The notes under the pieces: model-generated | Told to the model about the DNA's origin: nothing | Database searches by the model: none | The model's input: only the letters and a program-made list of their open reading frames with translations | Assembly: GCF_902652985.1 (NCBI RefSeq) | Contig: NC_047032.1 | Coordinates: forward strand, 30,194,001-30,258,000 | Length of the DNA: 64,000 nucleotides | Direction: 5' to 3' | Source of the DNA: Pecten maximus | Taxonomy: Eukaryota | Position numbers and translations under genes: made by a program | Shown here: positions 5,139-38,095 of the stretch, piece by piece | Layout of the letters: each line of letters opens with the position of its first letter | Position numbering within the stretch: the first letter of the stretch is position 1

Positions 5139-8100
5139 AGGAGAGCTCTAGTATCAGAGTAATGGCTAAACTAGGGGAGCTCTAGTATCAGGAGTAATGG
5201 CTAAACTAGGAGAGCTCTAATATCAGGAGTAATGGCTAAACTAGGAGAGCTCTAATATCAGGAGTAATGGCTGAACTAGGAGAGCTCTAGAACCAGGAGT
5301 AATGGCTAAACTAGGAGAGCTCTAGTATCAATAGTAATGGCTAAACTAGGAGAGCTCTAGTATCAATAGTAATGGCTAAACTAGGAGAGCTCTAATATCA
5401 GGAGTAATGGCTGAACTAGGAGAGCTCTAGAATCAGGAGTAATGGCTAAACTAGGAGAGCTCTAGTATCAATAGTAATGGCTGAACTAGGAGAGTTCATG
5501 TATCAATAGTAATGGCTGAACTAGGAGAGCTCTAGTATCAATAGTAATGGCTGAACTAGGAGAGCTCTAGTATCAGGATTAATGGCTAAACTAGGAGAGC
5601 TCTAGTATCAGGAGTAATGGCTAAACTAGGAGAGCTCTAGTATCAGGAGTAATGACTAAACTAGGAGAGCTATTGTATCAGGAGTAATGACTAAACTAGG
5701 AGAGCTCTAGTATCAGGGGTAATGGCTGAACTAGGAGAGCTCTAGTATCAATAGTAATGGCTAAACTAGGATAGCTCTAGTATTAGAGTAATGGCTAAAC
5801 TTGGAGAGCTCTAGTATCAATAGTAATGGCTAAACTAGGGGAGCTCTAGTATCAGGAGTAATGGCTAAACTAGGAGAGCTCTAGTATCAGGAGTAATGGC
5901 TAAACTAGGAGAGCTCTAGTATCAATAGTAATGGCTAAACTAGGAGAGCTCTTGTATCAGTAGTAATGGCTAAACTAGGAGAGCTATTGTATCAGTAGTA
6001 ATGGCTAAACTAGGGGAGCTCTAGTATCAGGAGTAATGACTAAACTTGGAGAGCTCTAGTATCAATAGTAATGGCTAAACTAGGAGAGCTCTAGTATTAG
6101 AGTAATGGCTAAACTTGGAGAGCTCTAGTATCAATAGTAATGACTAAACTTGGAGAGCTCTAGTATCAATAGTAATGGCTAAACTAGGAGAGCTCTAGTA
6201 TTAGAGTAATGGCTAAACTTGGAGAGCTCTAGTATCAATAGTAATGGCTAAACTAGGAGAGCTCTAGTATCAATAGTAATGGCTAAACTTGGAGAGCTCT
6301 AGTATCAATAGTAATGACTAAACTTGGAGAGCTCTAGTATCAATAGTAATGGCTAAACTAGGAGAGCTCTAATATCAGGAGTAATGTCTAAACTATGAGA
6401 GCTCTAGTATCAGGAGTAATGGCTAAACTAGGAGAGCTATTGTATCAATAGTAATGGCTAAACTAGGAGAGCTATTGTATCAGGAGTAATGACTAAACTA
6501 GGAGAGCTCTAGTATCAATAGTAATGGCTAAACTTGGAGAGCTCTAATATCAGGAGTAATGACTAAACTAGGAGAGCTCTAGTATCAGGAGTAATGGCTA
6601 AACTAGGAGAGCTAGCTCTAGTATCAATAGTAATGGCTAAACTAGGAGAGCTCTAGTATCAGGAGTAATGGCTAAACTAGGAGAGCTCTAGTATCAATAG
6701 TAATGGCTAAACTAGGAGAGCTATTGTATCAGGAGTAATGACTAAACTAGGAGAGCTCTAGTATCAGGAGTAATGTCTAAACTATGAGAGCTCTAGTATC
6801 AGGAGTAATGGCTAAACTAGGAGAGCTCTAGTATCAATAGTAATGGCTAAACTAGGAGAGCTATTGTATCAGGAGTAATGACTAAACTAGGAGAGCTCTA
6901 GTATCAATAGTAATGGCTGAACTAAGAGAGCTCTAGTATCAGGAGTAATGGCTAAACTAGGAGAGCTCTTGTATCAATAGTAATGACTAAACTTGGAGAG
7001 CTCTAATATCAGGAGTAATGTCTAAACTATGAGAGCTCTAGTATCAGGAGTAATGGCTAAACTAGGAGAGCTAGCTCTAGTATCAATAGTAATGGCTAAA
7101 CTAGAAGAGCTCTAGTATCAGGAGTAATGGCTAAACTAGGAGAGCTCTAGTATCAATAGTAATGGCTAAACTAGGAGAGCTATTGTATCAGGAGTAATGA
7201 CTAAACTAGGAGAGCTCTAGTATCAGGAGTAATGGCAAAACTTGGAGAGCTCTAGTATCAGGAGTAATGTCTAAACTATGAGAGCTCTAGTATCAGGAGT
7301 AATGGCTAAACTAGGAGAGCTCTAGTATCAATAGTAATGGCTAAACTAGGAGAGCTATTGTATCAGGAGTAATGACTAAACTAGGAGAGCTCTAGTATCA
7401 ATAGTAATGGCTGAACTAAGAGAGCTCTAGTATCAGGAGTAATGGCTAAACTAGCAGAGCTCTAGTATCAGGAGTAATGACTAAACTAGGAGAGCTCTAG
7501 AATCAGGAGTAATGGCTAAACTAGGAGAGCTCTAATATCAGGAGTAATGACTAAACTAGGAGAGCTCTAGTATCAGGAGTAATGGCTAAACTAGGGGAGC
7601 TCTAGTATCAGGAGTAATGGCTAAACTAGGAGAGATCTAGTATCAGGAGTAATGGCTGAACTAGGAGAGCTCTAGTATCAGGAGTAATGACTAAACTAGC
7701 AGAGCTCTAGTATCAGGAGTAATGACTAAACTAGGGGAGCTCTAGTATTAGAGTAATGGCTAAACTAGGAGAGCTCTAATATCAGGAGTAATGGCTGAAC
7801 TAGGAGAGCTCTAGTATCAGGAGTAATGGCTGAACTAGGAGAGCTCTAGTATCAGGAGTAATGGCTAAACTAGGAGAGCTCTAGTATCAATAGTAATGGC
7901 TGAACTAGGAGAGTTCTTGTATCAGTAGTAATGGCTGAACTAGGAGAGCTCTTGTATCAGGAGTAATGGCTGAACTAGGAGAGCTCTAGTATCAATAGCA
8001 ATGGCTAAACTAGGAGAGCTCTAGTATCAGGAGTAATGGCTAAACTAGGAGAGCTCTTGTATCAATAGTAATGACTGAACTAGGAGAGCTCTAGTATCAA

Positions 8101-8863: not shown

Positions 8864-9323
8864 TCTACTATCTGTTTACTTAGTGACTTCACATTATATA
8901 ATTAGACACATCAAGATTACAAACACTGCAACAAGTTAGTCATAGGTATAGCCATATAAACCCCACAAATAAGTCTAACCCTTCAGATTTATGAGAAAGT
9001 CAGGAGTTATTTGTTGGCCCCCATCTGCTACAAAAATGCCCATTTTACAAAGGTCAGACACTCTCAAAGTCAAAAATCATGTGAAACTTCAAACCCATCT
9101 TCTAGTCCAAAAAGAAAGCCATATACCCTCTAATCCTACGTTGATTTCAATAACATATATGCTGGAACAGGTCCAGTCCAGGATTCCCATCCTTCCATGT
9201 TACAGCATGTGATCTGTAATCTAGATCTGGACTGTCTGAGAAATATCAGTGAGTCACTAGCCACACTTCACCCCCTCCCTACATCTAAATTGGCCACAGT
9301 CGCATTCCTGAGATATAACCTGT

Positions 9324-10696
9324 TCTCTACAAGTACTAACACAGAAATTATCTCTACCAGTACTTACACAGAAATTACCTCTACCAGTAATTACACAGAA
9401 ATTATCTCTACCAGTACTTACACAGAAATTATCTCTACCAGTAATTACACAGAAATTATCTCTACGAGTACTAACACAGAAATTATATCTACCAGTACTA
9501 ACACAGAAATTATCTCTACCAGTACTTACACAGAAATTATCTCTACGAGTACTTACACAGAAATTATCTCTACCAGTACTAACACAGAAATTATCTCTAC
9601 CAGTACTAACACAGAAATTATCTCTACTAGTACTTACACAGAAATTATCTCTACCAGTACTTACACAGAAATTATCTCTACCAGTACTTACACAGAAATT
9701 ATCTCTACCAGTACTTACACACAAATTATCTCTACCGGTACTTACACAGAAATTATCTCTACCAGTACTTACACAGAAATTATCTCTACCAGTACTAACA
9801 CAGAAATTATCTCTACCAGTACTTACACAGAAATTATCTCTACCAGTACTTACACAGAAATTATCTCTACCAGTACTTACACAGAAATTATCTCTACCAG
9901 TACTTACACACAAATTATCTCTACCGGTACTTACACAGAAATTATCTCTACCAGTACTTACACAGAAATTATCTCTACCAGTACTTACACAGAAATTATC
10001 TCTACCAGTTCTTACACAGAAATTATCTCTACCAGTACTAACACAGAAATTATCTCTACCAGTACTTACACAGAAATTATCTCTACCAGTACTTACACAG
10101 AAATTATCTCGACCAGTACTTACACAGAAATTATCTCTATCAGTACTTACACAGAAATTATCTCTACACAGAAATTATCTCTACCAGTACTTACACAGAA
10201 ATTATCTCTACCAGTACTTACACAGAAATTATCTCGACCAGTACTTACACAGAAATTGTCTCTTCCAGTACTAACACAGAAATTATCTCTACCAGTACTA
10301 ACACAGAAATTGTCTCTACCAGTACTAACACAGAAATTGTCTCTACCAGTACTAACACAGAAATTGTCTCTACCAGTACTTACACAGAAATTATCTCTAC
10401 CAGTACTTACACAGAAATTATCTCTACCGGTACTTACACAGAAATTATCTCTACCAGTACTTACACAGAAATTATCTCTACCAGTACTTACACAGAAATT
10501 ATCTCTACCGGTACTTACACAGAAATTATCTCTACCAGTACTTACACAGAAATTATCTCTACCAGTACTAACACAGAAATTGTCTCTACCAGTACTTACA
10601 CAGAAATTGTCTCTACCAGTACTAACACAGAAATTATCTCTACCAGTACTTACACAGAAATTGTCTCTCACCAGTACTTACACAGAAGTTATCTTT
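9324..10696. repeat. Minisatellite, 27-bp unit (acacagaaattatctctaccagtactt)
   Basis: About 50 copies; explains the TEIISTSTY / QKLSLPVLT / CVSTGRDNF ORFs. Confidence 0.97.
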
Positions 10697-11729
10697 ACTT
10701 TCAAACCTTATGGATTATTTTGATCAAAACTTTACTCATCAGTAAGTTTTCTCTATCTTTAATTTTTGTTTCAGTTATAAAAAAGCATTAACATGAGATA
10801 TTGAAAATATTTTTGTCAATTAAATAACAAATGAACATTTCCAGTGCAGTCAATAACTCTATTCCAATAATATCAAAGATAATGTGCAGTCCTCTATGAA
10901 CCACCAGATTCTGTGAATATTTTATCCAGTGACATGCACGATTTAGCTAAAATTAGGAACTAGCTGGAATTTGGGTTTTCATGCAAAATAAAACACTATA
11001 AATATCAACAAAAGACCGGTAGCAGCTATCATATAGTCATTCCATCTTAACATGTTGGCACAATCTCAATTCCTCAACTCCGCACCATAAACAATGTAAC
11101 TGATGTTCAAATTTGTTAGGAATCTCTTGGGATCTGTAGAAGTCTTATTCCGACGTAACCGCCCACGTCAATAGCTCACATAACCCTTGCTCCATCAACA
11201 CAACAAACGTGGCAACACTTTCGGTAATTTATACCAGGTTTCTCCATTTGATTCAATGGCCTGCAGCACAGCTATTTAAAAATGTTAGGAGGAGATCAAC
11301 CAATATTCTCCCACCAATAAGATAAATTTGGTTATAATGTTCAATATTCAGGCGCCTTCTGCCAGGATCAACAATATCTTACTCCAAGACAGTCCCAAAA
11401 TAACTCCTATCAGAATTGTAAATATCCTTTTACCAGTATTTGTCTGTCCAATGTTGATATTTCTCCCCTTAACTCCGACAGCCAGACTTCTGAAGCTATG
11501 CACACCGTAATCAATCTTATTAATATGTTCACTGTATCTTTAAAAGCTAAACTATCTATAGGCAATGTTCCACAAAACTTTGTAATTGTTTTCCTGCAAA
11601 ACAATCAATTGGTTGAAACTCCATACAATGCAATCACATAATCTTTTTTTCAGATTCTCTGTGAAAAAATGTTTTTACAGTATAACAGTTTTCCAGTGTT
11701 TAACAGTGAGGACAATAACCTTGACCTAC

Positions 11730-11796
11730 CTTTGCATGTCCTTGACCTCCACAACTTTCCCAAAGGTACCTTCTCCTAGGGTGGAAACAATTTCAT
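11730..11796 (-). CDS. CLK2: CLK/Doa dual-specificity kinase, coding exon with Gly-rich ATP-binding loop (YEIVSTLGEGTFGKVVEVKDMQ), 67 nt
   Basis: Translation matches CLK-family subdomain I; acceptor ttttcag| and donor AG|gtaggt; phase joins the preceding exon (T+AT=Tyr). The symbol denotes a CLK-family ortholog; the paralog number is nominal. Confidence 0.93.
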
Positions 11797-12600
11797 CTGA
11801 AAACCAAACAATCACAACAGTAAACTCACATGCATGTGATAAGGAATTCACATGGAAAAACAGTAAAATGGAAAAGAAAAGAATTTCCTTTTACCAAAAT
11901 GGGTAAATAGTCCCTGGGAACATGCCAAGGTAGTAAATGCTATGAGCAATGCTTCAGTTACTTTGAGAAACATTCTCGAAAAATTTCCCATGAAATTGCT
12001 TCCTGCTCACGGAGATTTGGCTACAGTTCTGATCAAAAGAATTAGGGGCATGAAATCATTTACAAACGCAAACGTTTTCCCCCAGATCATGTGTTACCAT
12101 TTTGCTAAATATTCTGTGAACAAAACATTTCATAATGAATGATTAATATCTATATAGGATATAGAAATATATACGTGTTATATTTGGCAGCAATAGTATC
12201 CAGATTGTCACCATTGAATTAAGGGCAATAACTCATTTTATGCAACAATCTCCAAATTGCAAGCAATGCATGAAATATTCAACAATATTCTATGATCAAT
12301 ATAAGAATAGGTTCATATAAAATACATATCTAGGAAGCACATTAACATCAATAAACCCAAAACCCGTTTTCTAAGTGGTACTTGATTAATGAAATAGGGG
12401 GTGATTCTCTGAAACATCTCCCCAAGGGAAACATGATCGAACATCAGTGTTACCCCTTCGATTGTTATTCAACATCATAGGGACCAAATTAGGTCGAAAT
12501 ATTTGGGACATTGAAGGCCAATCGAAGGAATAATACACAAATAGGGGGCACTTATGATGCAAGATATATTCTAGGCTAAACGTTACGAAAAGAGGTGTAC

Positions 12601-12685
12601 ATCGTGCTTGTAGGACATCGCCCGGCTGATAGATCAGATGGCCTTCTTCATCGTCCACAACTCTCGGACCAGCCTCACTTTCATC
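12601..12685 (-). CDS. CLK2: CLK kinase, 85-nt cassette exon (DESEAGPRVVDDEEGHLIYQPGDVLQAR), equivalent of the regulated vertebrate exon 4
   Basis: Family-diagnostic DDEEGHL..GD.L..RY motif; acceptor ggaacag| and weak donor CGAT|gtacac; length is 1 mod 3. Confidence 0.92.
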
Positions 12686-13009
12686 CTGTTCCATCATCCC
12701 CAAACCCAACAGGTGGCAGCACCCCAGCAATCACCCAACAGCGAAACATCGTCATCGGCGTGGTAAGGGAGGCAGGAAGGCAGCACGGATGATACCCCAA
12801 ACATCGTTCATTCATATTCAGATTAAATGTTAGACAGCCCATAGTGTAGTCGGATCATTTTCATTGTCGGTTGACCGGCAAGTCAGGTGGAAGGGCGCAC
12901 ATGAGATAGATAAGGGAGGCGAATGTGTCACAAAAAAATACATCAGGACATATGGTCATCATTAAACAGTGTGTGCAACATATTTTACATTCAACGAGAC
13001 AGCAACACT
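12686..13009 (-). promoter_or_regulatory. AG-exclusion zone / predicted distant branch point region upstream of the CLK 85-nt exon
   Basis: No CT on + (AG on -) between 12688 and 13007; candidate branch motifs ctaac (12829-12833), ctgac (12882-12886) and tttaat (~12961-12966), with pyrimidine-rich stretches between them and the acceptor. Confidence 0.8.
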
Positions 13010-14387
13010 GCTACAGGTCAAGCCTATATCCTGGTGACCTTCAAAGGACCTTGGATTACTATACAAATCCAATCTTAAATTTGTTTTTGAAGACTATTTT
13101 TCATTCAATTATCTCCATAATTTTCGCAAATAACACTCTTTTAAGGCTTTAAAACAATCAGAAATGTACAGTTGATGAAAAAAAACACTACATCATCATT
13201 TTTAACAGCAATTTAAGTAAAGAACAAATTAAAAGAATTATTGTAAAAGTTTATTTACCAACTGGAAATAAATGATACGAATGTCAGTTGATATAATAAT
13301 TTTCATTTCCATTATTTCAGCAAATAAAATCTGAAATTCTGTAAAAACCTAATATTTCATCATTACCAAGATTCAACAAAAATCTATTGATTCCTATATA
13401 TGTCATAATTAAAATAAAGTTTACTTCAAAGAAATTAAATGTGAAAAACGATATCAAATCATTACAAGTTTCAGGATGCCATGGGATAGTATGATCTTTG
13501 TACATCGGGCAAGGAGTCTTTTTAAGAGTGATGTATCCCCTGGCAACAGCAAGGTCACATGAAGGTCACAAGGATAGACAGACCTGATAGTGGTGCTGCT
13601 ATAACAATGTCAGTTGATACATACATAAACAAGAGGCTTTCACCAGTATTCAATTATCTAAAATTACCCTATACATCATCTGCCGGCAGTCTATATAGAA
13701 TTACAGTCAATGGTATTTATAGGAAAATTCTTATAAATTATCACACAAAAGACATTAGTACTATAGGTAAGCAATTTTCTATTTCAAAAAGATTTTATAC
13801 AGTATTTAAATATTGATTATTTAGATATTTGATTTAGATTTGTTTTTGTGTTAATTTCATATTTGAGGCATACTATATATATATTTATTTGTTTTAATTT
13901 TCTGGTAAATTTTACAAACCATATCATGACAATATCACCTTTTAATGAACAAAAATAAACAAACCTTGAAAATTAAATTGTCTTAATCAGTAGATGATTA
14001 TCAGAGCAATTAGGCATCAAAACAACTTTCGTTTTGGTCTATATCTTTTAAAATATAATCCCACAACTAATTTCACTTAATCTCACAACACCCTGATGAC
14101 CTTGACCTTGTATTGATCATGCCTGACAATGAAGTGACCTTCACATTGTGCCTATTTATAACCTATAGCTAGGAGTGTGTACCTAGAGTGTTTGTCTAGT
14201 CAGCTAGTACATACTAACTAGTTCCATCTGCTGAAGGAGACCGTAGTACCCTGTACATGTCAACATTGACATAGATTCTCATTGGCCTGTGATGAAGTAA
14301 ACGGCAAAATTGGCAACTAATGAAACAGCCAAAGGTAATTAGCCTCAACTTCAGAAGACACATGTTAGCGACTCAAAGTAACACATG

Positions 14388-14875
14388 AGAAATATTCAAC
14401 CTTGTCAAGCAGCTCAAAGTCGGTCAACTCAAGGTAATTAAGACTGAAAAATATTCAAACTTGTCAATGAAAAATATTCAAACTTGTCAAGCAGCTCAAA
14501 GTCAGTCAACTCAAGGTAATTAAGACTGAAAAATATTCAAACTTGTCAATGAAAAATATTCAAACTTGTCAAGCAGCTCAAAGTCGGTCAACTCAAGGTA
14601 ATTAAGACTGAAAAATATTCAAACTTGTCAATGAAAAATATTCAAACTTGTCAAGAAGCTGAAAGTCGGTCAACTCAGGGTAAGTACAACTGAAAAATAT
14701 TCAAACTTGTCAAGCAGCTGAAAGTCAGTGCACTCAAAGCAATTTGGACTGAAAAATATTCAACCTTGTCAAGCAGCTGAAAGTCTATTAATTAAACTCA
14801 CAGCTAAAAATAGCCAACCTTGTTAAACAGATGAAAGTCTACCAACTCAAGTAAACACCTAAAAATATCCAACTT
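14388..14875. repeat. Degenerate tandem repeat (aaaatattcaaacttgtcaagcagct...)
   Basis: Several diverged ~60-80 bp copies. Confidence 0.8.
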
Positions 14876-15731
14876 TGCACAACATTTGAAAATTAGTCAA
14901 CCATATAAAACATTCCAAAAAGTAGTTGTATCTTGGTCTTTGTTGAGTTTTACATGTCAATATAGAGCTGAGGTATAAAGTTCATAACGCTGAAAGTCGT
15001 GTAGATGCCATCCTAGTCTGTGTAGATATTTTGGTAGTGGATAGAGGCGAGATCGATAGCATGTTATATGTTTTTTACTTCCTACCTCCATCCCCAGACA
15101 TGGAGAAACCACCATGTACATCACATGTAAATTGTCTAAATTGAAAGTTTAAGTGAAAACAAATGTATTTGAATTAATCCTTCCACCCCTCCAAATGAAC
15201 TTCTCAAAGTATAAATCCATACATGGATCATTTCACTGAACAAGTAAATGGGGGATATCAGGGTTAATGGCGCAAAACTTAATTTAAAACCTCATAACTT
15301 GGAAACGATGTTGCAGGAACGATATATATTAATTTGTGTTTTATTAAGAAATGGGAAGTTTTGTTTGTAGTTACCATGTCTATTTAGTATGTTGTCTTGG
15401 CAACAATTTCCAGTCCTAACAAAATCCCTGTAAAATTCTACAGAAATAGATGATGTGATATTAATCAAAAGTCGTAAACTACCCAGTGCAACATTCCCAC
15501 AAACTCTTTTATGATATAATCTACATTTTGACAATCCAATTCCTTACGTCAGATCTGATCCACCTGTAATAATCAGTTTATCTGCCTGGTATTCTCATAT
15601 TGTTTGTAACAATTATTTTGACATTTCAATTTTATGACAAACTAGGTTTTCCTGTGAACTGCTTGTAATAGTTATATGACTATCCTACAACAGACTGTTA
15701 CCTATGTGTTTTCTTAGCCTTCAGCTCAAGC

Positions 15732-16658
15732 CCTAGGTGTCACCCGTGTACCTGGTCCTAGGTGTCACCTGTCACCGGTGTACCTGGTCCTAGGTGTCAT
15801 CCGTGTACTTGGTCCTAGGTGTCACCTGTGTACCTGGTCCTAGGTGTCACCTATGTACCTGGTTCTAGGTGTCACCTGTGTACCTGGTCCTAGGTGTCAC
15901 CTGTGTACTTGGTCCTAGGTGTCACCTATGTACCTGGCCCTAGGTGTCACCCGTGTACCTGGTCCTAGGTGTCACCCTTGTACCTGGTCCTAGGTGTCAC
16001 CCGTGTACCTGGTCCTAGGTGTCACCCTTGTACCTGGTCCTAGGTGTCACCTGTGTACCTGGTCCTAGGTTTCACCTGTGTACCTGGTCCTAGGTGTCAC
16101 CTGTGTACTTGGTCCTAGGTGTCACCTATGTACCTGGTCCTAGGTGTCACCCTTGTACCTGGTCCTAGGTGTCACCTGTGTACCTGGTCCTAGGTGTCAC
16201 CTGTGTACCTGGTCCTAGGTGTCACCCGTGTACCTGGTCCTAGGTGTCACCCGTGTACCTGGTCCTAGGTGTCATCCGTGTACCTGGTCCTAGGTGTCAC
16301 CCGTGTACCTGGTCCTAGGTGTCATCCGTGTACCTGGTCCTAGGTGTCACCTGTGTACCTGGTCCTAGGTGTCATCCGTGTACCTGGTCCTAGCTGTCAC
16401 CCGTGTACCTGGTCCTAGGTGTCACCCGTGTACCTGGTCCTAGGTGACACCCGTGTACCTGGTCCTAGGTGTCACCGGTGTACCTGGTCCTAGGTGTCAC
16501 CCGTGTACTAGGCTAGGTGTCACCTGTGTACCTGGTCCTAGGTGTCACCTGTGTACCTGGTCCTAGGTATCACCTGTGTACCTGGTCCTAGGTGTCACCT
16601 GTGTACCTGGTCCTAGGTGTCACCCATGTACCTGGTTCTAAGTGTCACCTGTGTACCT
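15732..16658. repeat. Minisatellite, 25-bp unit (cctaggtgtcacctgtgtacctggt)
   Basis: About 37 copies. Confidence 0.97.
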
Positions 16659-18049
16659 ATCGACCAATACAATATTGTCCCGTTCAATGTATCTTATTTC
16701 CTGTATATTACTGTCTTATCATGTAATAAGCCCAGGTCCAGGATGTGCTTATATATTACAGGACCATGAAATAGCACTTGATGGTAATTTAACTGAACAG
16801 GAAAAGATATCGGTGGGCTTATTATGTATTAATTAATTACAAAGCTTCAGTTTATGTTTAGATTATGGCAGCAATTAAGCGTCTGTCTAGGAAGACTAGT
16901 GTCTCGACCTCTCCCTCCACTGAGTTCTCAACCAGAACTACGTGAATCCCCATCAGCTGTACAATCCTAGGTCAGATAACACCACATTCCAATACACCCA
17001 TGGGTTTTTTCCCTCTACTTAGGTCCTTCCGTTCTGATTTAATCAAATCTAACATACCCAAGGGAGACAACTGTCAGTAATATCATCTGCTAATTCTTCA
17101 GATTTCTTCTGCTTACTCATCCCTTGATGAGGTTATTAAATTAGGTCTTAAATAAGGTTTTAAAGTCTGTTAAGATCTATGTTACAGTTAGAGAGAAACA
17201 CCAAAAAGTGAAACAAATTCCTAAGCACTGAATAACCTACTTAAAAATGCAGATTGAACCCAAAATTTTGTTGCTAAGGCAATGACAGGTCTGGAGTAAA
17301 AACTAACTGCTGTAAAGCACCAGGAAAATGAGTAACGAGAAGAAACAAACCTTTGATAGTGAGGACAGGTCTTATTCTCTATTATATGTAACAGCAACAA
17401 GGTATTCAAGACAACCAATTACTCCCTCCCCTCTCCCATCCCCCCAATCCTTTCCAACACAATGTATTGGTCTATAATATTATAAAACAATTCCAGATAA
17501 AGTTTATATATATACATATGCCTCAAAAGTAGTTTTCAACCTTAATAAACATACATATATCTCATTTCTAAATCTATCAAATAGTAATATACATTGATTC
17601 ACGTTTCATCCTAAGTCACATATTTAGACCAATCAGAAACTGCCACTTAGAAAAGTACAAATAGTTTTTGTTCTGAAGATCAAGGAATATCTACATCTTT
17701 TTTATTTTTATTTACTTTTATTTATTTTTATTTATTTTTATATTATATTTTTTTTAAAGGGTAGGGTGGGGCCATGTAATAAGTAAACAATCTACTGTTT
17801 TGCTATGACCATCGCTGAAACCAATCAGGTTATTTCTAAGTCTATCTAAGCATGGATGACATTTAAGTATAACACAACAATAAAGAAAGTCAGTATTAGA
17901 CATGGGGGGACGAGATAGCTAGAATGGCCTAAAGGGAGATAACTCAGGCCTAGAAGGCAGTCTGATTGGTCCAAAGATGGTAATATAAACAAACATTATA
18001 CTAGAGATTTGATGTGAGAAACATGCGACTACAATCAAACCTGTCTTAC

Positions 18050-18214
18050 CGCGATGTTCTGGTAGTCATTGTCATGTTTATAGCTACTATAGCTGTAATT
18101 GTTGGTCAGAGACCCGTTTAATCCGGAGGAACTGGACGCTCCCGACAGGGTTTGTGTGGTAGGCATCGCAGCCCATTCCGTTATACCCGCCTGACTAAGG
18201 CCATCCACTCGCAT
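18050..18214 (-). CDS. Candidate alternative first coding exon of CLK (MRVDGLSQAGITEWAAMPTTQTLSGASSSSGLNGSLTNNYSYSSYKHDNDYQNIA)
   Basis: Open 55-codon frame ending exactly at phase 0 in GCG|gtaaga, compatible with the phase-0 acceptor at 12685; locally GC/CpG-richer than the flanking intron. Confidence 0.5.
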
Positions 18215-21200
18215 CTCAGACACAACATTGGTTTTATTACAGCTAAAACCTTTGCACAATTCCTCTGTTATTTCTCACACCAACTTTACCACAAATATTA
18301 CTATTTCCGGCTCGTCATAAAAAAGTGTGAAAATTATAAAACAACGGAGAAAGATCTGTAATGAATAATCCTTCTGTTTACAAGAGATTATTCACAGCCA
18401 AGTTATTCCAAAAGGGTTGAGTAGAAACTCCCAAGATTATCACTGGAATGGTAATCCAAGTTCACAAATTCAACTAAATCCAGTCAGTCATATGACTTAA
18501 ATCCAGTCAGTCATACAACTGAACAAGTAAGCTGTGAAGCTGAAGTGATACTGCTGTACTGTTTCAACAGACAGACTGGTAGGCCTAACACACACATCAA
18601 TGTACACCGGGCTCCACATACATCCCAGGAGGTATCACCATCCCCCAGCACACGAAATTCTCAAAACTCCACAAAAGTTGTGGAACTTCTGGGGAAGCTG
18701 GTAGAAAGTTCCAAGTCACTGGCAGAAAGTTCCGAAATGTAGAAGGGTGATAGAGAATGACAGAAGCCCTCACTGTGTTTCAGTGGGAGGAAGTTGGCCC
18801 CAGGAAAGAGTAAAGTATGTAATTCTCCTCCCAACACTGTACCACAGACTCCTCACCATCCTGAGCTATAAATAGCACACTCCCCTATCTCTGCAGCACT
18901 TCAGCATCATCAGCTACTGGTTGCCACGGGTTCCCCAGAGGATCCCCAGGGGGTGTCAGAGGGGAGGCCAGTGGAGGACTCCCAGGGGGTCACCAACACC
19001 CCCTGGTACCAATTACACACATCAGAACAAGCTGGACAAGACCAGAGTCAGGTTTCATAACACCAGGATCTGATCTAACATCACACTATATTGATGATCA
19101 GCCTACAGGCCACAGTAATCATCCTAGTACCTACTTCTGTTGGGCCTGTACACAAACATTACATTCTCAAATCTCTACCAAATCTGTACAGTATCAGTGT
19201 AATCATCTTCCTTCTTGGGCTTAATAGGTGTCTTATGATTACAGTAAAAATCTTTCAGTCTTTATGAAGTTTTCATTCACTATCAAACCCGACATATCTT
19301 CGACTTTTCTCTGAAATATTCTATAAATATATTGTAGTAAACTTAAATATTTGATAAATATATCATAAAAAAACTTTTTTTCTGAAATATTCCTAAAATA
19401 TATCACAGAATATATGAAATGAACATATATTTCATGGATTTGTTTATTTTACAGCTAGCACTGTCATCTTCATCATAAATAACTTCAACTTGTATGTCAT
19501 TATAGAAATATCCTAAAGATTCTTTAAATCAACTTCTATCCTATCAATCTAAAAGTCTCTTTAAATCAACTTCTATCATGCTCATCTGGCATTTCAGCAT
19601 AAAGTTCATAAAACACAAATATCTTTAAATGTTCTAGTCCTATGACATGGTGTTTCTATTTATCATGTTTACGATATCTATGTACCCCATACAGAGCCCC
19701 CAACTCACTAACTCCTCTTTGATACCTGTGTAAGTTTCCCTCCAGGACCCCCCCTGGACCAGTTCCAAATGACTGTTACCTATAAAACATGCACAGAAGA
19801 TCTCTGGAGTGTAATCCTAGCACAGGGAGGGGGAGTGATCAATTCTGGCATCCAAATCAAACTTCAGCTGGAGGGTTTCATCCTGTATCTCACCACTGGG
19901 GAGTCAATTGGGGTACATGTTTCTGACCACACAGAACCTTCATATATAACCAGCGGACAATCGGACCTACAAATATCTATAGAATAGTCCTTGAAAGTCA
20001 GAGATATATATATTAGATGTCACTATCCTTTATATCATTGGAATATATATTACTGAGGAGAAGTTTCTTTCCTTCGAGTTGAGACTTTGCTGCTTGTCTA
20101 GTTTAATACATAACGAGCCCATTAAATGAACTGGGAAAACTTCTGTTAGGGAGGAACACATCTGATGAATTACCTACTAGACCTGAAGTAAATTCCATAA
20201 TTCAAAGACTTGTGACCAAACTCTTCATCTTAAAAATATTAATCTTATTCCCTCAAATTTGTAACCTAAAACACAGGAAACTTATCTCAAAATGACCTGA
20301 TATAATGAATTACAATATTCCAAAGAAAATATGTTTCCTGTATGGAGAAATTAAAGATTAGACCTAATTATCCAGTATAAATTGTTAAAAATACATACAA
20401 CTCCCCAAAATTATTTCTGGCATAACTCGTTCAGTTAAAACACAGTATAGAAACCTATCAAATGTACACATCAGCCGCCACATATTTCTATAGTAGAATC
20501 ACTGTTCCTCTGCGGAGTTAACTAAAGAATGCCTCCAAACCACAAAAAAACCTCGCACAACCATGGCAACCTACACAATGACTTACACTGGAGTGTATAA
20601 ACAAAGGGATGACTTGTGATTGGCTCAGTACCTACATAGTCAGCCCATTGATCAGTTATCTCTAACTCATGGCCACATCAACACTACCCCTAATCAACAT
20701 GTTTACTACAATAAAATAAAAAAAAAAAAGAAATATCATCCTCATCATCTAAACACTCCTATTCAATCATCATCTGAACACTCCTGCTCCTCTGCTTAAA
20801 AATTATTTCTTTTCTAATAATTTCCTCGCAGGACTGTTAGCTATCTGTTCAAATATCACAATGATTATTTTGTTATAATTTCCAAGGTACTAATTAACGA
20901 TGACAGCTTAATGATGATTCACGAAAAAATTAAATGCTGAGAAAACCCATCCAAACCACTTCTATGTTGCCTATTTTCTAGCACATCGCAATTCCGTCAT
21001 TCCACCTTCCGTTCAAACACTTGGTTCTGTTTTTTCTACACACCAGAATTCTGTCAAGTTTATTGAATTACTCTCCGGCTACAAATGAAATTCTGTTGAC
21101 ACACTTGGGATAGAAGTTTCTTACAGTATATTGAAATCATCTTCCTTAATTTTCTTTTGCTAATATGATTAGTAATACACTTCGCAGTGCGTGGAATTTC

Positions 21201-22844
21201 CCAGCAGTTAATGGTTTTCAAAAGTTACTTTTTCCTCTCATCCATTCCTGTATAAGGGTGTTCTCTTAATGTAGAAGATTCAATACAGAGATAGAATTTG
21301 TCTACGCTATTAAATTAAGTTCTGGGCACTTTGTCGACAAACAAATTCTTCTAATTCCTTATCTGCTTTTAATTTTGCTTCTCTTAATGTTTCCTGTTCT
21401 ATCTGTTAAAATCCATTCTGACTCAAAATAATGTCTTTTGTTGAACATCTCATGTATAACCAAGACTTCACATTGAATGGGTTACCAGTCTTCAAGTGCC
21501 ATCCCATCCACACAAAACCATTCAATATTCCAGTTCAAGAATTATAAGTTGTATTTACAACTGTATCTAGTTCCCATGAGTTCACAACATTTACAATTGT
21601 CTCTACTTCCTGTGAGTTCACAAAGTTTTCAGTTCAGCATTCCAGTTTACTAATTAAATATCAGTTTTTAAGTTCAGTATTCTTGTAAACAAACGATTGT
21701 TTACAATTACTGTCTGTACACATCTATCTCCTTGTTCACGAAATTTGACAGTTTAATGTTTCAATTCAAATGCTTGAAGTTAAAAAATTGATTGCCACAC
21801 AGCCAACTCCTCATTCAAAATAGTTAGACCAGATTCCATTTTAAACATTTAGTAATTCATTCATTGTCTGATCAAATCCCCAGTTCACAAATTATAACAA
21901 TCCTCATATCTCATTCACATATATCTTAAGATTGTCTAGTGATTGGTACCTGAACTTGAGGTTACCACTAAACATGAAGTCAGCATGTCTGTTTAGATCA
22001 CAATGGGAACTCGTGTCTGGAACCCAGACAATAGGACACTTCTACAGACTTCCACCAAGTCCTACTTGTCCCGTGGTTTTCTAGGACTTAAATGGCAAAG
22101 ACCTGAATTAGAATCGTCAAAAATACATGAAAGCTGAACTTTGCGACCTACTCTACACAACCTTGACAACTCTTCCCTTCACATATTGATCTCTTGAAGT
22201 GAAAAATAATGAAGTTTTGGGAATACGAGACGGAACACACATGTGCGACAACCCTAAGCCGAACGGGGAGTTATTATTGTCTAAACTACTAGTCTGCCAG
22301 GCACAAATAATCAATAAAAGGTCCGGCCAGTAGTAATCACAGGATGCCATGTATAAATTGCCTCCATTTTGGGCCTAAAAAGTGTAACGACAGATTGTCA
22401 TCCATTTGTCAGGGTATTTAAATATTCCTGAATAATCATGAATAATTACGTCACTTAACACCTTAACTTCCCTCTAGCACTGGTGTTATACTGTTCTGAT
22501 GATTTGCAGACAAACATCATGTAACTTTATATAATCAATCAATTACTTCCCTCTTTCACTAAATCTTCTAAACATAAAATGAAAATGCCAGACACTGCAA
22601 TTACTTGTAGATATGTCTAAGAATAAATTAATGGAAATTTAAAAGCAGTATCAATTTATATATGCTCAAAACTAATTATCATTTCATATCATTATAATTA
22701 CATACTATGTTACGGTCTTCCATCTGTTTCTTCTTTATAAACTTATCTTTTTTTAACTAATTGGACATTTCATGCTATAAAACTTGACCATTTCTTTATG
22801 AATTAAAACACTATATTTTTGGGATATTTTTTTTGCTATGATTA

Positions 22845-22980
22845 TGTAACCCCTATAAAAACTAGCTAGCTACTTCCTACCGGCTCAGCTATGGAGAATT
22901 TCTCTTTAGCTCAATCGATAGTGTGTTAGACTAGTAAGCCAAGAGCCAGAGGTCCTAGATTTAATCTCTTGCTAAGGCTT
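22845..22980 (+). mobile_element. Degenerate copy of the tRNA-Thr-like, TGTAAC-initiated short element (see 32212-32370)
   Basis: Shares tgtaaccc start, ttctctttagctc.atcg, agactagtaagcca and ggtcct with the 32212 copy. Confidence 0.65.
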
Positions 22981-23331
22981 GAAATAAATTATATGATATA
23001 TACTATATACAATTACTTTTATACATCATATATTTTATCTAGCTAACAGTATCAGTATATTTAACAATTTTCTTTTTCTTTATAGGTTAAAAATAATATT
23101 TAAAATATATTTTGATCAGTTCACTATTGTAATTTCTTTTGTTATTAAATGTGGAAATTTCTTTCAAATTAGTTTAATTACACAATATATTGTAAAACAA
23201 ATTTTTGGAGTCAGCCTAATTTCTGTATGTGTACACAGTGTGGTATGTATGCTATATCCAGCTTCTTTATCAGTTCAATCAATAACATTTTATCCTATTT
23301 TTCCATCATCAATCAGCATATGTAAATTTCT

Positions 23332-23783
23332 TTTGTTTATGTATGATCAACTGACGGTCCTCCCGTACGAGAGCACACCTATTTGTTTATGTATGATCAA
23401 CCGACGGTCCTCCCGTACGAGAGCACACCTATTTGTTTATGTATGATCAACTGACGGTCCTCCCGTACGAGAGCACACCTATTTGTTTATGTATGATCAA
23501 CTGACGGTCCTCCCGTACGAGAGCACACCTTTCTGTTTATGTATGATCAACTGACGGTCCTCCCGTACGAGAGCACACCTTTCTGTTTATGTATGATCAA
23601 CTGACGGTCCTCCCGTACGAGAGCACACCTTTTTGGTTATGTATGATCAACTGACGGTCCTCCCGTACGAGAGCACACCTATTTGTTTATGTATGATCAA
23701 CTGACGGTCCTCCCGTACGAGAGCACACCTTTCTGTTTATGTATGATCAACTGACGGTCCTCCCGTACGAGAGCACACCTTTT
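23332..23783. repeat. Minisatellite, 50-bp unit, 9 copies (tttgtttatgtatgatcaactgacggtcctcccgtacgagagcacaccta)
   Basis: gtatgatcaa recurs every 50 nt from 23341 to 23741. Confidence 0.97.
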
Positions 23784-23999
23784 ACGTTCTGTGCACTGGC
23801 ACTGTCTGTTATTCTCCCATCTCCTAACACTTCTATAGCACATATCAAAACAAGTACAAATGCACAATCTTATGATATCTTATAGTAACACACCTGCCTA
23901 CCAAAATCAATCAAAGAGCAGACAACTCATCACTGACTTTTGTCACTCAATGCTAAGCCTTTATTTGACATTTTGACACATGTACAGTTTTTGACTTAC

Positions 24000-24013
24000 C
24001 TCCCAAGTTCCAG
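24000..24013 (-). other. Candidate 14-nt microexon of CLK (CTGGAACTTGGGAG)
   Basis: Pyrimidine tract plus ttttgacag| acceptor, consensus GAG|gtaagt donor, TGCATG ~30 nt upstream. Confidence 0.45.
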
Positions 24014-24632
24014 CTGTCAAAATAACATACAGGGAGACATGCACACAAGGGGAGGGGTGGGACATGTCTATAGATTTCTACCACATCAGGGCTATAATTT
24101 TCTCACATGAAATTAAGCATTCTCTTTTTTTGTCTATGCATGAGATAGCTACATAAGTTCCATTGGCTCCCCCCCCCTCCCCCCACTCTTTCTAAATGGT
24201 AAGTATTTCTGATATAAAGCTGTCAGTTAACGATCCTCTATTTACTAACCCAGATGTTTTTGCAAATAATATTCTTCATAAAAAAAAACTGTTGCAAATT
24301 GATTCAAATCAAGTATGACTTTTAGCAAAATGATATATAAATGCTATCTTTGTGTCCCTATCATCGAATATAAACCTGTTTTTCTGAGTCTATGTACCTT
24401 ATAGAAAATCACCATGATTAAAGGAAGTAATTATACACTGCACTATGTGATTATAAAATAAGATTATTGTATTTAGTTAACTAATGGAAATTGTTAATTG
24501 GTATATGTAGTTTCCAAAAATATAACCTTACCTAACATCACAAACAACTATGAGCTATTTGTACTTAATCTGGGGTTCAAGTAAGGGCGTTCATACAGGA
24601 ACTATATCTATATTGGTCACAACAACAGTTAC

Positions 24633-24652
24633 CTCCCTTCGACAAGTCAATT
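24633..24652 (-). other. Candidate 20-nt poison microexon of CLK (AATTGACTTGTCGAAGGGAG)
   Basis: ttttggtttttgtgtgcag| acceptor and GAG|gtaact donor; reads AAT TGA in frame with exon 3. Confidence 0.45.
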
Positions 24653-24888
24653 CTGCACACAAAAACCAAAATGGAAGTTTTCACACATATTCAAATTATA
24701 TACAAGAAAAAGAAATTTCAGAAACTGGTATTGTATACATTCAGATTTCTGATGTAATTGTTGTAAAACAAGAGAGGTGAGCTCTATGAGTTTGTACATG
24801 GTCAAGGGGAGGTAACTGTGGTGTGAGAACCTAACTCTGCCTGTGCTATGGTGGGTATAGGCCTACACATGTATAGAACAACTCCTAC

Positions 24889-32370: not shown

Positions 32371-32922
32371 CCTATATAAGTATCACGATTATTACATAAC
32401 GCACAGACTGTCAATATTATTGATATTGAAATAACGTTTAGCCAGCGACCAGTAGAGTGAGGATAGAGCTGCTTGGGAATAGTGTACATATACACACATT
32501 TAGCTAGGTTCGATGTACCAAAACGCTATCCAACTAGCCTAATCAAAAAAGTTTAATTTGGACAGAGACGTATATATAGGTCACTGATTTGGGTTAGTTT
32601 TATGTCATGCGTTTCGTTTCCATTTGTGAACAGAAGAAAACCAATATTTTAGCCTTTTCAATCACGGCTTTCTCATTGCTTTTCACTTCAATTTAATGGG
32701 ATTGATTGTGTACACTAACCGGGGTTTTGGTTTTCTTCATTGGAGTGGAAACTATTTTATAATAATCCGTAACTCTAATCTTTTAATCCAATATTGTGTT
32801 ATAACGTTGTTTTTTTGTTTTTTTTTCTTTGTAGAAAACTTCCTATTCAGACGTGGAATTATTTCTTTTAATGTTCCCATTATTTTCCAGCAGTAGATGC
32901 TGTCGGTACACATTTAGCCCAG

Positions 32923-35900: not shown

Positions 35901-36471
35901 TAGTACCTGTGTAGCGAGGTAGGGCCGAGGGCGGGTAGTCCGTGTGTAGCGAGGTAGGACCGAGGGTGGGTAGTCCCTGTGTAGTGAGGTAGGGCCGAGG
36001 GCGGGTTGTCCCTGTGTAGCGATATAGGGCCGAGGGCGGGTAGTCCGTGTAGGACCGAGGGTGGGTAGTCCCTGTGCAGTGAGGTAGGACCGAGGGCGGG
36101 TTGTCCCTGTGTAGCGAGGTAGGACCGAGGGCGGGTTGTCCCTGTGTAGCGAGGTAGGACCGAGGGCGGGTAGTCCCTGTGTAGCGAGGCAGGGCCGAGG
36201 GCGGGTTGTCTCTGTGTAGCGATATAGGGCCGAGGGCGGGTTGTCCCTGTGTAGCGATATAGGGCCGAGGGCGGGTTGTCCCTGTGTAGCGATATAGGGC
36301 CGAGGGCGGATAGTCCATGTGTAGCGATATAGGTCCGAGGGCGGGTAGTCCCTGTGTAGCGAGGTAGGGCCGAGGGCGGGTAGTCCCTGTGTAGCGAGGT
36401 AGGGCCGAGGGCGGGTAGTCCCTGTGTAGCGAGGTAGGGCCGAGGGCGGGTAGTCCCTGTGTAGCGAGGTA
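32923..36471. repeat. GC/CpG-rich minisatellite, 35-bp unit (gtgtagcgaggtagggccgagggcgggtagtccct)
   Basis: About 100 copies; source of all overlapping PRYTGTTRPR ORFs on the minus strand. Confidence 0.98.
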
Positions 36472-36761
36472 TACAAAGAATGCACGTCCCTGTTTTATTA
36501 CAATGTAAATTGTATATCAGAGTATTGACGCTTAAATATTTTATCAATGTAATATTGGTATATCTAGCCTTTATAGAACTAGCAATGAAATGTGCTGAAA
36601 TCGAAATAAACATGCAAATATACAACATGCCATTACAGCTGTCACCTTTCTGAGATCTATACATCACACCTGTAAATAACAGAACGTGCCTGAAGGTCAC
36701 AGATACTGGTGATAACCGTTAGGTAGGACACTCGTGTATTGTATATTCACACCTGAGTAAG

Positions 36762-38095
36762 TCTGCTGAAGGGTAATTACCAAATACAGTAACCTTACCC
36801 TCTGCTGAAGGGTAATTACCAAATATAGTAACCTTACCCTCTGCTGAAGGGTAATTACCAAATATAGTACCCATACCCTCTACTGAAGGGTAATTACCAA
36901 ATATAGTACCCATACCCTCTACTGAAGGGTAATTACCAAATACAGTAACCATACCCTCTACTGAAGGGTAATTACCAAATACAGTAACCATACCCTCTAC
37001 TGAAGGGTAATTACCAAATATAGTACCCATACCCTCTACTGAAGGGTAATTACCAAATACAGTAACCATACCCTCTACTGAAGGGTAATTACCAAATATA
37101 GTACCCATACCCTCTACTGAAGGGTAATTACCAAATATAGTACCCATACCCTCTACTGAAGGGTAATTACCAAATACAGTACCCATACCCTCTACTGAAG
37201 GGTAATTACCAAATATAGTACCCATACCCTCTACTGAAGGGTAATTACCAAATATAGTACCCATACCCTCTACTGAAGGGTAATTACCAAATACAGTACC
37301 CATACCCTCTACTGAAGGGTAATTACCAAATACAGTAACCATACCCTCTGCTGAAGGGTAATTACCAAATACAGTACCCATACCCTCTACTGAAGGGTAA
37401 TTACCAAATACAGTACCCATACCCTCTACTGAAGGGTAATTACCCAATATAGTACCCATACCCTCTACTGAAGGGTAATTACCAAATATAGTACCCATAC
37501 CCTCTACTGAAGGGTAATTACCAAATACAGTAACCATACCCTCTACTGAAGGGTAATTACCAAATACAGTAACCATACCCTCTACTGAAGGGTAATTACC
37601 AAATACAGTACCCATACCCTCTACTGAAGGGTAATTACCAAATATAGTACCCATACCCTCTACTGAAGGGTAATTACCAAATATAGTACCCATACCCTCT
37701 ACTGAAGGGTAATTACCAAATATAGTACCCATACCCTCTACTGAAGGGTAATTACCAAATACAGTACCCATACCCTCTACTGAAGGGTAATTACCAAATA
37801 TAGTACCCCTACCCTCTACTGAAGGGTAATTACCAAATATAGTACCCATACCCTCTACTGAAGGGTAATTACCAAATATAGTACCCATACCCTCTACTGA
37901 AGGGTAATTACCAAATATAGTACCCATACCCTCTACTGAAGGGTAATTACCAAATATAGTACCCATACCCTCTACTGAAGGGTAATTACCAAATATAGTA
38001 CCCATACCCTCTACTGAAGGGTAATTACCAAATACAGTAACCATACTCTCTACTGAAGGGTAATTACCAAATACAGTAACCATACCCTCTACTGA
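36762..38095. repeat. Minisatellite, 39-bp unit (ctctactgaagggtaattaccaaatatagtacccatacc)
   Basis: About 34 copies; source of the FGNYPSVEGMGTI ORF. Confidence 0.97.

What the first reader, a model, noticed from the sequence alone, without database searches (positions are those of the whole stretch)
12686..13009. 320-nt AG-exclusion zone and purine-rich acceptor before the CLK regulated exon
Seen: on the transcribed (minus) strand there is no AG dinucleotide for 320 nt (13007 to 12688), whereas AG occurs every few tens of bases at most in nearby intron. The acceptor itself (tttggggatgatggaacag) lacks an adjacent pyrimidine tract; pyrimidine tracts and branch-like motifs lie ~80-280 nt upstream, and GATG/GATGTTT motifs recur. 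Established: long AG-free zones mark distant branch points at regulated exons; from memory, which needs checking, this has been reported for human CLK genes. Inference: a deeply conserved distant-branch-point regulatory element under purifying selection.
Basis: partly seen in the sequence, partly recalled or inferred. Interest (0 to 1): 0.75.

Follow-up and report, generated by a model that had tools for sequence, protein, structure and literature searches.

The report
AG-free zone before scallop CLK exon
A mollusc splicing-kinase gene has a 320-base stretch with no AG just before its on/off exon, as human CLK1 and CLK3 do, which suggests the branch point lies far upstream and that this splicing switch may be older than vertebrates.

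Summary
On the minus strand no AG occurs between 13009/13008 and the acceptor AG at 12687/12686. That is 320 nt where about 15 AGs are expected (0 of 20,000 shuffles gave fewer than 4). Ten other acceptors of the same gene have AG-free zones of 15-105 nt.

RNA contigs show that the acceptor is used. A 12.2-kb intron (24888..12686) is spliced onto an 85-nt exon (12685-12601) homologous to CLK exon 4. The exon is skipped in one low-depth contig, which gives a stop after 6 codons. The exon's acceptor and the whole downstream intron persist unspliced in 4 of 4 runs, while the next intron has no cover.

A 2010 paper mapped branch points at -224/-229 and -196 in AG-free zones of 235 and 207 nt before human CLK1 and CLK3 exon 4. 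This is therefore a new member of a known kind.

One probably arthropod ortholog has a zone of only 35 nt.

Additional findings: the zone folds less well than all 100 shuffles, G-runs separate the pyrimidine tract from the AG, and the exon's donor (GTACAC) is the weakest in the gene.

The parts
12688..13007 (-). 320-nt stretch with no AG dinucleotide on the transcribed strand (AG exclusion zone)
   Evidence: About 15 AGs are expected and none is found. It is predicted to be less structured than all 100 dinucleotide shuffles (z=+3.05). No inverted repeats.
12686..12687 (-). 3' splice site AG of the 12.2-kb intron (acceptor of the exon-4 homolog)
   Evidence: in 2 of 4 runs (X8, X9) contigs end at 12687 and continue with the last letters of the RS exon, located at 24891-24889.
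13008..13009 (-). First AG upstream, the 5' boundary of the zone. A second AG lies at 13011-13012.
12601..12685 (-). 85-nt cassette exon encoding DESEAGPRVVDDEEGHLIYQPGDVLQAR, homolog of vertebrate CLK exon 4
   Evidence: 60-77% identity to mollusc CLK2-like proteins. Junctions. 85 is 1 modulo 3, like the 91 and 97 nt of human CLK1 and CLK3 exon 4.
12595..12600 (-). Weak 5' splice site GAT|GTACAC of the exon
   Evidence: Joint 11796/12601 in 3 of 4 runs. It departs most from the GTRAGT consensus (recalled) among the 11 exon-end contexts listed, read by eye. CT(P/R/V) follows the exon in two relatives' retained-intron ORFs, which fits a GTAC donor.
12890..12950 (-). Distal pyrimidine-rich tract (U7 run, then pyrimidine fraction 0.70-0.80) with branch-like sites at 12943 (-258), 12911 (-226), 12902 (-217) and 12883 (-198)
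12962..13018 (-). Most distal branch candidates: 13018 (-333, GCTTGACCT, within about 15 nt above the zone), 12991 (-306, TTGAA, seen by eye) and 12962 (-277)
   Evidence: Likelihood argument from the length of the zone.
12823..12830 (-). Best consensus branch motif GTCTAACAT (A at 12830, -145), and TTTAAT (A at 12823, -138)
   Evidence: 5 of 7 matches to TACTAAC.
12762..12795 (-). Middle pyrimidine tract (fraction 0.75-0.85) ending in CCCTTACC (A at 12764, -79). The 10-mer GCCTCCCTTA also occurs at 12911-12920.
12688..12761 (-). Purine-interrupted spacer rich in G-runs between the last pyrimidine tract and the AG, with four GGG/GGGG runs in the last 50 nt including GGGG at -16..-13
   Evidence: GGG 9 against 3.7 expected, P=0.0025, post hoc.
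11797..12600 (-). Intron 4 (804 nt), retained in RNA contigs
   Evidence: spliced joint in 3 of 4 runs. Unspliced contigs across it or its ends in 4 of 4 runs.
11730..11796 (-). Exon 5 (start of the kinase domain, YEIVSTLGEGTFGKVV). If exon 4 is skipped it reads MKLFPP then a stop.
12686..24888 (-). Intron 3 (12,203 nt), whose last 322 nt are the finding

Best explanation
The zone is the AG exclusion zone of a distant-branch-point 3' splice site. This site controls the 85-nt cassette exon of the single CLK (CLK2-like) gene of this bivalve.

Inferred mechanism:
1. U2 snRNP pairs with one or more branch sites near the upstream end of the zone. The most distal used site probably lies between -258 and -333. 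It is supported by the interrupted pyrimidine tract at 12950-12890, and perhaps by a second branch/tract module at -145 to -76.
2. After the first catalytic step the spliceosome takes the first AG downstream. Any AG arising in the 320 nt would therefore become the splice site and destroy the reading frame. This is why AG is selected against: 140 of 960 possible substitutions would create one.
3. The long, unstructured spacer with G-runs at its end, and the weak GTACAC donor, make the exon poorly defined. The transcript is then fully spliced (active kinase), or skips the exon (RS domain followed by MKLFPP and a stop), or waits with both flanking introns unspliced.

By analogy with mammalian CLK1/4, CLK activity acting through SR proteins would set the choice, giving feedback.

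Shown here: the AG-free zone, the used acceptor, the skipped junction and the unspliced forms.
Inferred: branch position, the scanning mechanism in this species, the regulators and the feedback.
For: - Zone statistics.
- Outlier in its own gene: 320 nt against 15-105 nt at 10 other acceptors, and pyrimidine fraction 0.30 against 0.55-0.90 next to the AG.
- Acceptor used: 2 of 4 runs. Exon 4-exon 5 joint: 3 of 4 runs. RS exon joined directly to exon 5: 1 of 4 runs (60-nt contig, depth 2.45).
- Contigs crossing the acceptor unspliced: 4 of 4 runs. One is a 2216-nt contig whose other 671 nt begin with exon 6, so it is RNA spliced downstream.
- Zero depth over 11000-11669 (intron 5) in 4 of 4 runs. 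This serves as an internal control against DNA carry-over.
- Human precedent at the homologous exon, with branch points mapped in vitro at the 5' end of the zones (PMC2991248).
- General rule that distant-branch exons carry such zones and are alternatively spliced (PMC1431707).
- Mouse Clk1 keeps introns 3 and 4 unspliced in the nucleus, and the cis element is exon 4 plus the proximal introns (PMC3187705).
- If only the -145 site were used, the further 175 AG-free nt would need P=2.5e-4.
- A relative's transcript ORF (P0267) reads through the same acceptor and donor, so retention occurs there too.
Against: - No lariat or branch read was available, because all four runs were contigs.
- The skipped form rests on one short, low-depth contig.
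- The best-consensus branch motif (CTAAC, -145) lies in the middle of the zone, not at its distal end.
- L018, a probably arthropod ortholog with the same 85-nt exon, has a normal 35-nt zone and a strong donor. The arrangement is therefore not needed for the exon as such.
- In the relative P0267 the last 48 nt of the intron differ by an insertion or deletion and several changes, so the sequence itself is not strongly conserved there.
- The polymorphism deficit in the zone alone is not significant (P=0.08).
Confidence: 0.7

Rival explanations
1. Only a middle or proximal branch (-145 CTAAC or -79) is used. The upstream 175-240 nt are AG-free for another reason or by chance.
For: The -145 site is the best match to the U2 consensus and is followed by the strongest pyrimidine tract at 12795-12762. 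The 10-mer GCCTCCCTTA occurs in both modules, which is compatible with a duplicated module of which one copy is idle.
Against: The chance of the extra AG-free length is 2.5e-4 for -145 and 1e-5 for -79. In human CLK1 and CLK3 the stronger mid-zone signals were not the mapped branch points; the distal ones were.
Confidence: 0.12
2. The zone is mainly a single-stranded landing pad for splicing repressors or activators (G-run, UG-rich or YGCY binders). Lack of AG would then be a by-product of the motifs it must carry, not of AG scanning.
For: The zone is less structured than 100 of 100 shuffles, while the flanks give z=-0.18 and -1.72. GGG, YGCY, GCUG and UUGGG are enriched (P=0.001-0.01, post hoc). 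G tracts between the pyrimidine tract and the AG are described as silencers linked to intron retention and distant branches (PMC6339879).
Against: Motif enrichment does not explain the complete, strand-specific absence of one dinucleotide among 68 As and 76 Gs, with GA at 21. The two ideas are not exclusive, because regulatory elements typically sit inside such zones.
Confidence: 0.1
3. Chance, a compositional artefact or a repeat.
For: Real genome DNA holds more long AG-free gaps than shuffles predict: 10 of 300 nt or more in 294 kb, both strands.
Against: Nine of those ten are repeats or G-poor. This one is single-copy and of balanced composition. It abuts exactly a used acceptor of the exon whose human homologs carry the same feature.
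Confidence: 0.03

Closest known systems
Long AG exclusion zones with distant branch points before human CLK1 exon 4 and CLK3 exon 4 (Corvelo et al. 2010, PMC2991248; passages read)
   Same: It is the homologous exon, encoding the DDEEGHL motif just before the kinase domain, with a length of 1 modulo 3 (85 against 91 and 97 nt). The AG-free zone is very long (320 against 235 and 207 nt). The pyrimidine tracts are interrupted by purines. Stronger-looking branch signals sit mid-zone. Short cores resembling the mapped human branch sites (TTGAC; CTTATCT at -226 against -229) are present. These are a lead only: 7 letters each, noticed post hoc.
   Different: This is a mollusc and the gene is the single CLK2-like gene. 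The zone is about 90-110 nt longer. The intron is 12.2 kb. The branch points are unmapped. I did not see the human intron sequences themselves (supplement closed, no human DNA fetched), so no alignment was made.
Detained introns 3 and 4 of mammalian Clk1/Clk4 and the exon-4-skipped, kinase-less form (Ninomiya et al. 2011, PMC3187705; review PMC11346455; passages read)
   Same: Both introns flanking the exon are found unspliced in RNA while the next intron is not. Skipping shifts the frame to an early stop.
   Different: Nuclear detention, the response to stress, temperature or CLK inhibition, and NMD were not tested here. Intron 3 is 12.2 kb here against 871 nt in mouse, and I saw only its last 2.3 kb covered.
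Class of distant-branch-point exons defined by AG exclusion zones (Gooding et al. 2006, PMC1431707; passages read), e.g. PTB exon 11
   Same: The zone is far above the 100-nt threshold, which about 0.7% of human introns reach. The exon is alternatively spliced, and skipping gives a premature stop in a splicing regulator.
   Different: That class was defined in human. No experimental branch mapping was done here.
REPAG: G tracts between the pyrimidine tract and the 3' AG (PMC6339879; passages read)
   Same: A GGGG run at -16..-13 and three more G-runs in the last 50 nt, together with a distant branch and intron retention.
   Different: Binding by hnRNP H/F-type proteins is unknown in this species. 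Here the spacer is about 75 nt, much longer than the -15..-3 window used to define REPAG.

Membership tests
Distant-branch-point exon with AG exclusion zone (Gooding 2006; Corvelo 2010) | AG-free zone of at least 100 nt directly upstream of a used 3' splice site | tested here: met
   320 nt. The acceptor is used in RNA contigs.
Distant-branch-point exon with AG exclusion zone (Gooding 2006; Corvelo 2010) | Branch point experimentally located far (100 nt or more) upstream | not testable with these tools
   All runs were Logan contigs, so no lariat reads were available. There are only sequence candidates and a likelihood argument.
Distant-branch-point exon with AG exclusion zone (Gooding 2006; Corvelo 2010) | Pyrimidine tract next to the distal branch candidates rather than next to the AG | tested here: met
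   Pyrimidine fraction is 0.70-0.80 at 12950-12890 and 0.30 at -3..-22.
Distant-branch-point exon with AG exclusion zone (Gooding 2006; Corvelo 2010) | The exon is alternatively spliced | tested here: met
   Skipped junction in 1 of 4 runs (weak: 60-nt contig, depth 2.45). Unspliced forms in 4 of 4 runs.
CLK exon-4 autoregulatory switch (mammalian CLK1/4) | Homologous exon before the kinase domain whose skipping shifts the frame | tested here: met
   (MKLFPP then a stop).
CLK exon-4 autoregulatory switch (mammalian CLK1/4) | Selective retention of the two introns flanking the exon | tested here: met
   intron 4 and the last 2.3 kb of intron 3 are covered, while the first 670 nt examined of intron 5 have zero depth in 4 of 4 runs. 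Contigs give presence only, not level.
CLK exon-4 autoregulatory switch (mammalian CLK1/4) | Splicing responds to CLK activity, heat or stress | not tested
   This needs experiments or condition-resolved raw reads.
CLK exon-4 autoregulatory switch (mammalian CLK1/4) | High sequence conservation of the intron parts next to the exon | tested here: inconclusive
   A relative's read-through ORF, P0267, keeps about 17 residues of intron 4 and the last 3-4 codons of intron 3, but differs further upstream. No DNA of other molluscs could be fetched.
REPAG 3' splice sites | GGG between -15 and -3 of the 3' AG | tested here: met
   GGGG at -16..-13.

The most novel reading that the evidence does not exclude
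The whole CLK exon-4 switch already existed in the last common ancestor of molluscs and vertebrates. That switch comprises a frame-shifting cassette exon, a distant branch point with a 200-300-nt AG-free scanning track, a weak donor and two detained flanking introns. It would be homologous rather than convergent, down to branch-site cores at similar distances. It would then have been lost or simplified in small-intron lineages such as the arthropod-like L018. On this reading it is an ancient stress or temperature feedback of ectotherms, not something tied to endothermy as a recent review suggests (PMC11346455).
Probability: 0.35. Interest if true: 0.7.

Novelty: new member of a known kind. Interest (0 to 1): 0.5.

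Why it matters
CLK kinases set the phosphorylation of SR splicing factors. In mammals their own exon 4 and its two flanking introns form a fast feedback and temperature switch whose cis-logic is still not understood.

A mollusc gene shows the same odd 3' splice site design, the same frame-shifting exon and the same pair of waiting introns. This suggests the design is functional rather than a vertebrate accident, and it gives a second, very distant example in which shared features stand out:
- no AG for hundreds of bases;
- no RNA structure;
- G-runs before the AG;
- a weak donor.

It also warns annotators and variant interpreters that any AG-creating change within 320 nt of this exon should be disruptive.

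Tried and rejected
- Metagenome scan with the exon frame: 3 loci. Two are cDNA (L017, L019). One is genomic (L018), with a short zone.
- Paralog comparison: the genome has only this CLK gene. Other hits are at most 41% identical kinases.
- Known RNA families: none reached its gathering score; the two matches listed at E<=1 (E=0.25 and 0.88) score about half of it.
- Stable structure in the zone: rejected, and the opposite was found.
- Inverted repeats: none.
- Protein database search with a 53-aa frame inside the zone: no hit.
- GATG motif enrichment: not significant.
- Repeat or transposon origin: rejected (single copy).
- Literature: searches found no paper on CLK splicing or AG-free zones in molluscs. 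Only PMC2991248 holds both 'AG exclusion zone' and 'CLK1'. This covers the held library only.
- Supplement Text S1 of PMC2991248 (figures of the CLK1 and CLK3 introns) was not seen. It may bear on the motif-level comparison.
Exons were searched singly.

Full report
**What is there.** Read on the minus strand, the window carries an AG at 13009-13008. The next AG is at 12687-12686, with 320 AG-free bases in between. The stretch is not simple sequence. It has A68 C75 G76 T105 over 324 nt, GA 21 times and CT 25 times, so the gap is specific to AG and to this strand.

Shuffling the zone gives 15.3 AGs on average and never fewer than 4 in 20,000 trials. Dinucleotide shuffles of the window never exceed a 218-nt gap (200 trials). 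Within the same gene the median AG spacing is 11 nt and the next longest gap is 137 nt.

As a harder control I read 294 kb of real DNA from this genome on both strands. It holds ten AG-free gaps of 300 nt or more. Eight are low-complexity repeats and one is a G-poor repeat-like stretch. The tenth is this one, the only gap with balanced composition (about 15 AGs expected). The region is single-copy in the 918-Mb genome.

**The gene.** The minus strand encodes the genome's only CLK-type kinase. One search found no paralog, and PMC12795684 says molluscs have one CLK. The exons are 54-85% identical to bivalve, gastropod and cephalopod CLK2-like proteins.
- The large RS-domain exon ends at 24889.
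- The next exon is 12685-12601, 85 nt, encoding DESEAGPRVVDDEEGHLIYQPGDVLQAR.
- Exon 5 (11796-11730) starts the kinase domain.
- Exon 6 lies 26 kb further on, outside the window.
- The intron that ends in the AG-free zone is 12,203 nt long (24888..12686).

**RNA evidence.** A run search listed 24 runs. Twenty hold the stretch or part of it, 14 hold half or more of its words, and 4 are on record as RNA, from 7 studies. I laid four runs on 11000-15000 (X8 and X9, recorded as RNA; X1 and X5, guessed RNA). All four are Logan contigs, so they show presence but not level, strand or branch points.
- (a) The exon 4-exon 5 joint (11796/12601, GT..AG on the minus strand) appears in 3 of 4 runs.
- (b) In 2 of 4 runs contigs stop at 12687 and continue with the last letters of the RS exon. 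The acceptor is therefore used, and the RS exon is spliced directly to this exon.
- (c) In 1 of 4 runs (X9) a 60-nt contig at depth 2.45 joins the same RS-exon letters to exon 5. This is the skipped form. It is thin evidence. Skipping would read MKLFPP and then a stop.
- (d) In 4 of 4 runs contigs cross the acceptor unspliced (12658-13003, 12658-13134, 12601-13383, 11729-13273). The last belongs to a 2216-nt contig whose other 671 nt start with exon 6. It is therefore an RNA spliced downstream that keeps intron 4 and the end of intron 3.
- (e) Depth is zero over 11000-11669 (intron 5) in 4 of 4 runs, which argues against DNA carry-over as the source of the intron cover.
- No other junction falls in the zone. 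None of the variants seen creates an AG there: the only variant in the zone is at 13004.

**How unusual the splice sites are.** Ten other acceptors of the gene have AG-free zones of 15-105 nt and pyrimidine fractions of 0.55-0.90 at -3..-22. This one has 320 nt and 0.30. The last 75 nt are a purine-interrupted spacer with four G-runs, including GGGG at -16..-13.

Pyrimidine tracts lie at 12795-12762 and 12950-12890. Branch-like sites lie at -79, -138, -145 (the best consensus, GTCTAAC), -198, -217, -226, -258 and -277. There is also a TTGAC site at -333, which lies within the about 15 nt above the zone where AGs close to a branch are bypassed.

The exon's donor, GAT|GTACAC, departs most from the GTRAGT consensus among the 11 exon ends I listed and read by eye.

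The zone is predicted to fold less well than every one of 100 dinucleotide shuffles (z=+3.05). The 320 nt upstream give z=-0.18 and the first 320 nt of intron 4 give z=-1.72. There are no inverted repeats.

GGG, YGCY, GCTG and TTGGG are enriched (P=0.001-0.01, chosen post hoc).

**What is known.**
- PMC2991248 (passages read) mapped branch points in vitro for human CLK1 exon 4 (91 nt; zone 235 nt; branches at -224 and -229) and CLK3 exon 4 (97 nt; zone 207 nt; branch at -196). It noted that the branches lie at the 5' end of the zones, that the pyrimidine tracts are purine-interrupted, and that stronger mid-zone signals are not the ones used.
- PMC1431707 defines the class. The spliceosome searches linearly for the first AG after a distant branch, hence the AG-free zone. 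Such exons are alternatively spliced and vulnerable to any new AG.
- PMC3187705 shows that mouse Clk1 keeps introns 3 and 4 unspliced in the nucleus, and that exon 4 plus the proximal introns suffice for this.
- PMC6339879 links G tracts between the pyrimidine tract and the AG with weak sites, intron retention and distant branches.
- A review (PMC11346455) describes the extreme conservation of CLK1/4 exon 4 and its introns across vertebrates and ties it to endothermy.

**Reading.** The simplest account is that this is the same device in a mollusc. The length of the zone carries information. If the most distal used branch were at -145, the further 175 AG-free bases would have P=2.5e-4. The figure is 0.012 at -226, 0.05 at -258 and 0.13 at -277, and nothing is left to explain at -333. 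Since 140 of 960 possible substitutions would create an AG, the zone would not persist without selection.

I therefore expect branches in the distal module, as in human. The middle module may be an alternative or a regulatory decoy. The regulators (SR proteins, G-run binders) and the feedback by CLK activity are inferred by analogy only.

**Limits and contrary results.**
- No branch was mapped.
- The one genomic ortholog I did get (L018, nearest to arthropod CLKs) has the same 85-nt exon. However, its upstream intron is about 180 nt, its AG-free zone is 35 nt and its donor is a strong GTAAGT.
- A Logan-derived protein, P0267, is a read-through ORF from a relative. Its exon differs by 1 residue. 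The first about 17 intron-4 residues and the last codons before the acceptor are conserved. The 48 nt before the acceptor differ by an insertion or deletion. This shows retention in a second species but not strong sequence conservation, and protein letters cannot tell whether AG is absent there.
- Polymorphism across the four runs is low in the zone (1 variant against 4.2 expected from 13010-15000, P=0.08). It is low over 11797-13009 as a whole (6 against 15.8, P=0.004). Cover is uneven, so this is only suggestive.

**Verdict.** The feature is a new member of a known kind. Its value lies in the phylogenetic distance from the human cases.

Noticed in passing
window 18035-18259 (-): An open frame encodes MRVDGLSQAGITEWAAMPTT.., similar to the alternative N-termini of bivalve CLK isoforms that lack the RS domain (P0156 E=5e-8; also P0165, P0155). 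It is followed by a GTAAGA donor. It is probably an alternative first exon inside intron 3 that also splices to the acceptor at 12686.
   Followed up: partly
L004 about 1745-1918 and 824-970 (window -28.1k and -29.0k), minus strand: Two neighbouring exons encode alternative versions of the same kinase segment (..[25 protein letters not shown] and ..[26 protein letters not shown]). Both versions occur in different mollusc isoforms, so they are likely mutually exclusive exons.
   Followed up: no
L004 about 6290-6870 (window -23.1k to -23.8k), minus strand: The intron after the DFG/APE exon holds a tandem array that repeats the exon's last codons and its donor region (frames read ..HDRAPEVILGMY.. 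many times). This is a possible array of decoy 5' splice sites.
   Followed up: no
window about 12450-12545 (-): The first 320 nt of intron 4 tend to fold (z=-1.72, 4 of 100 shuffles fold as well), with a long hairpin pairing CCUUCGAUUG.. with ..CAAUCGAAGG.
   Followed up: no
window 14394-14581: One RNA-run contig (X8) lacks these 188 nt (ends AT..AA, not splice-like). This is probably an insertion/deletion polymorphism in intron 3.
   Followed up: no
window 9197-10723; 32843-36700; 36719-38101: Large tandem-repeat arrays (long open frames in several phases) lie in intron 5 and upstream of the gene. They produce the other long dinucleotide-free gaps in the window.
   Followed up: no
P0004 (Pinctada imbricata gene model): This deposited model joins an MRVD-type N-terminus to the kinase domain without the exon-4 segment and stays in frame (..GVSLIDEIASTLGEG..). 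For transcripts from the internal promoter, skipping may therefore not truncate the protein.
   Followed up: no
G000:C7:17718607-17719605 (L005): A 546-aa open frame without introns is 35% identical to the CLK kinase domain. It is another CMGC-type kinase or a diverged retrocopy.
   Followed up: no
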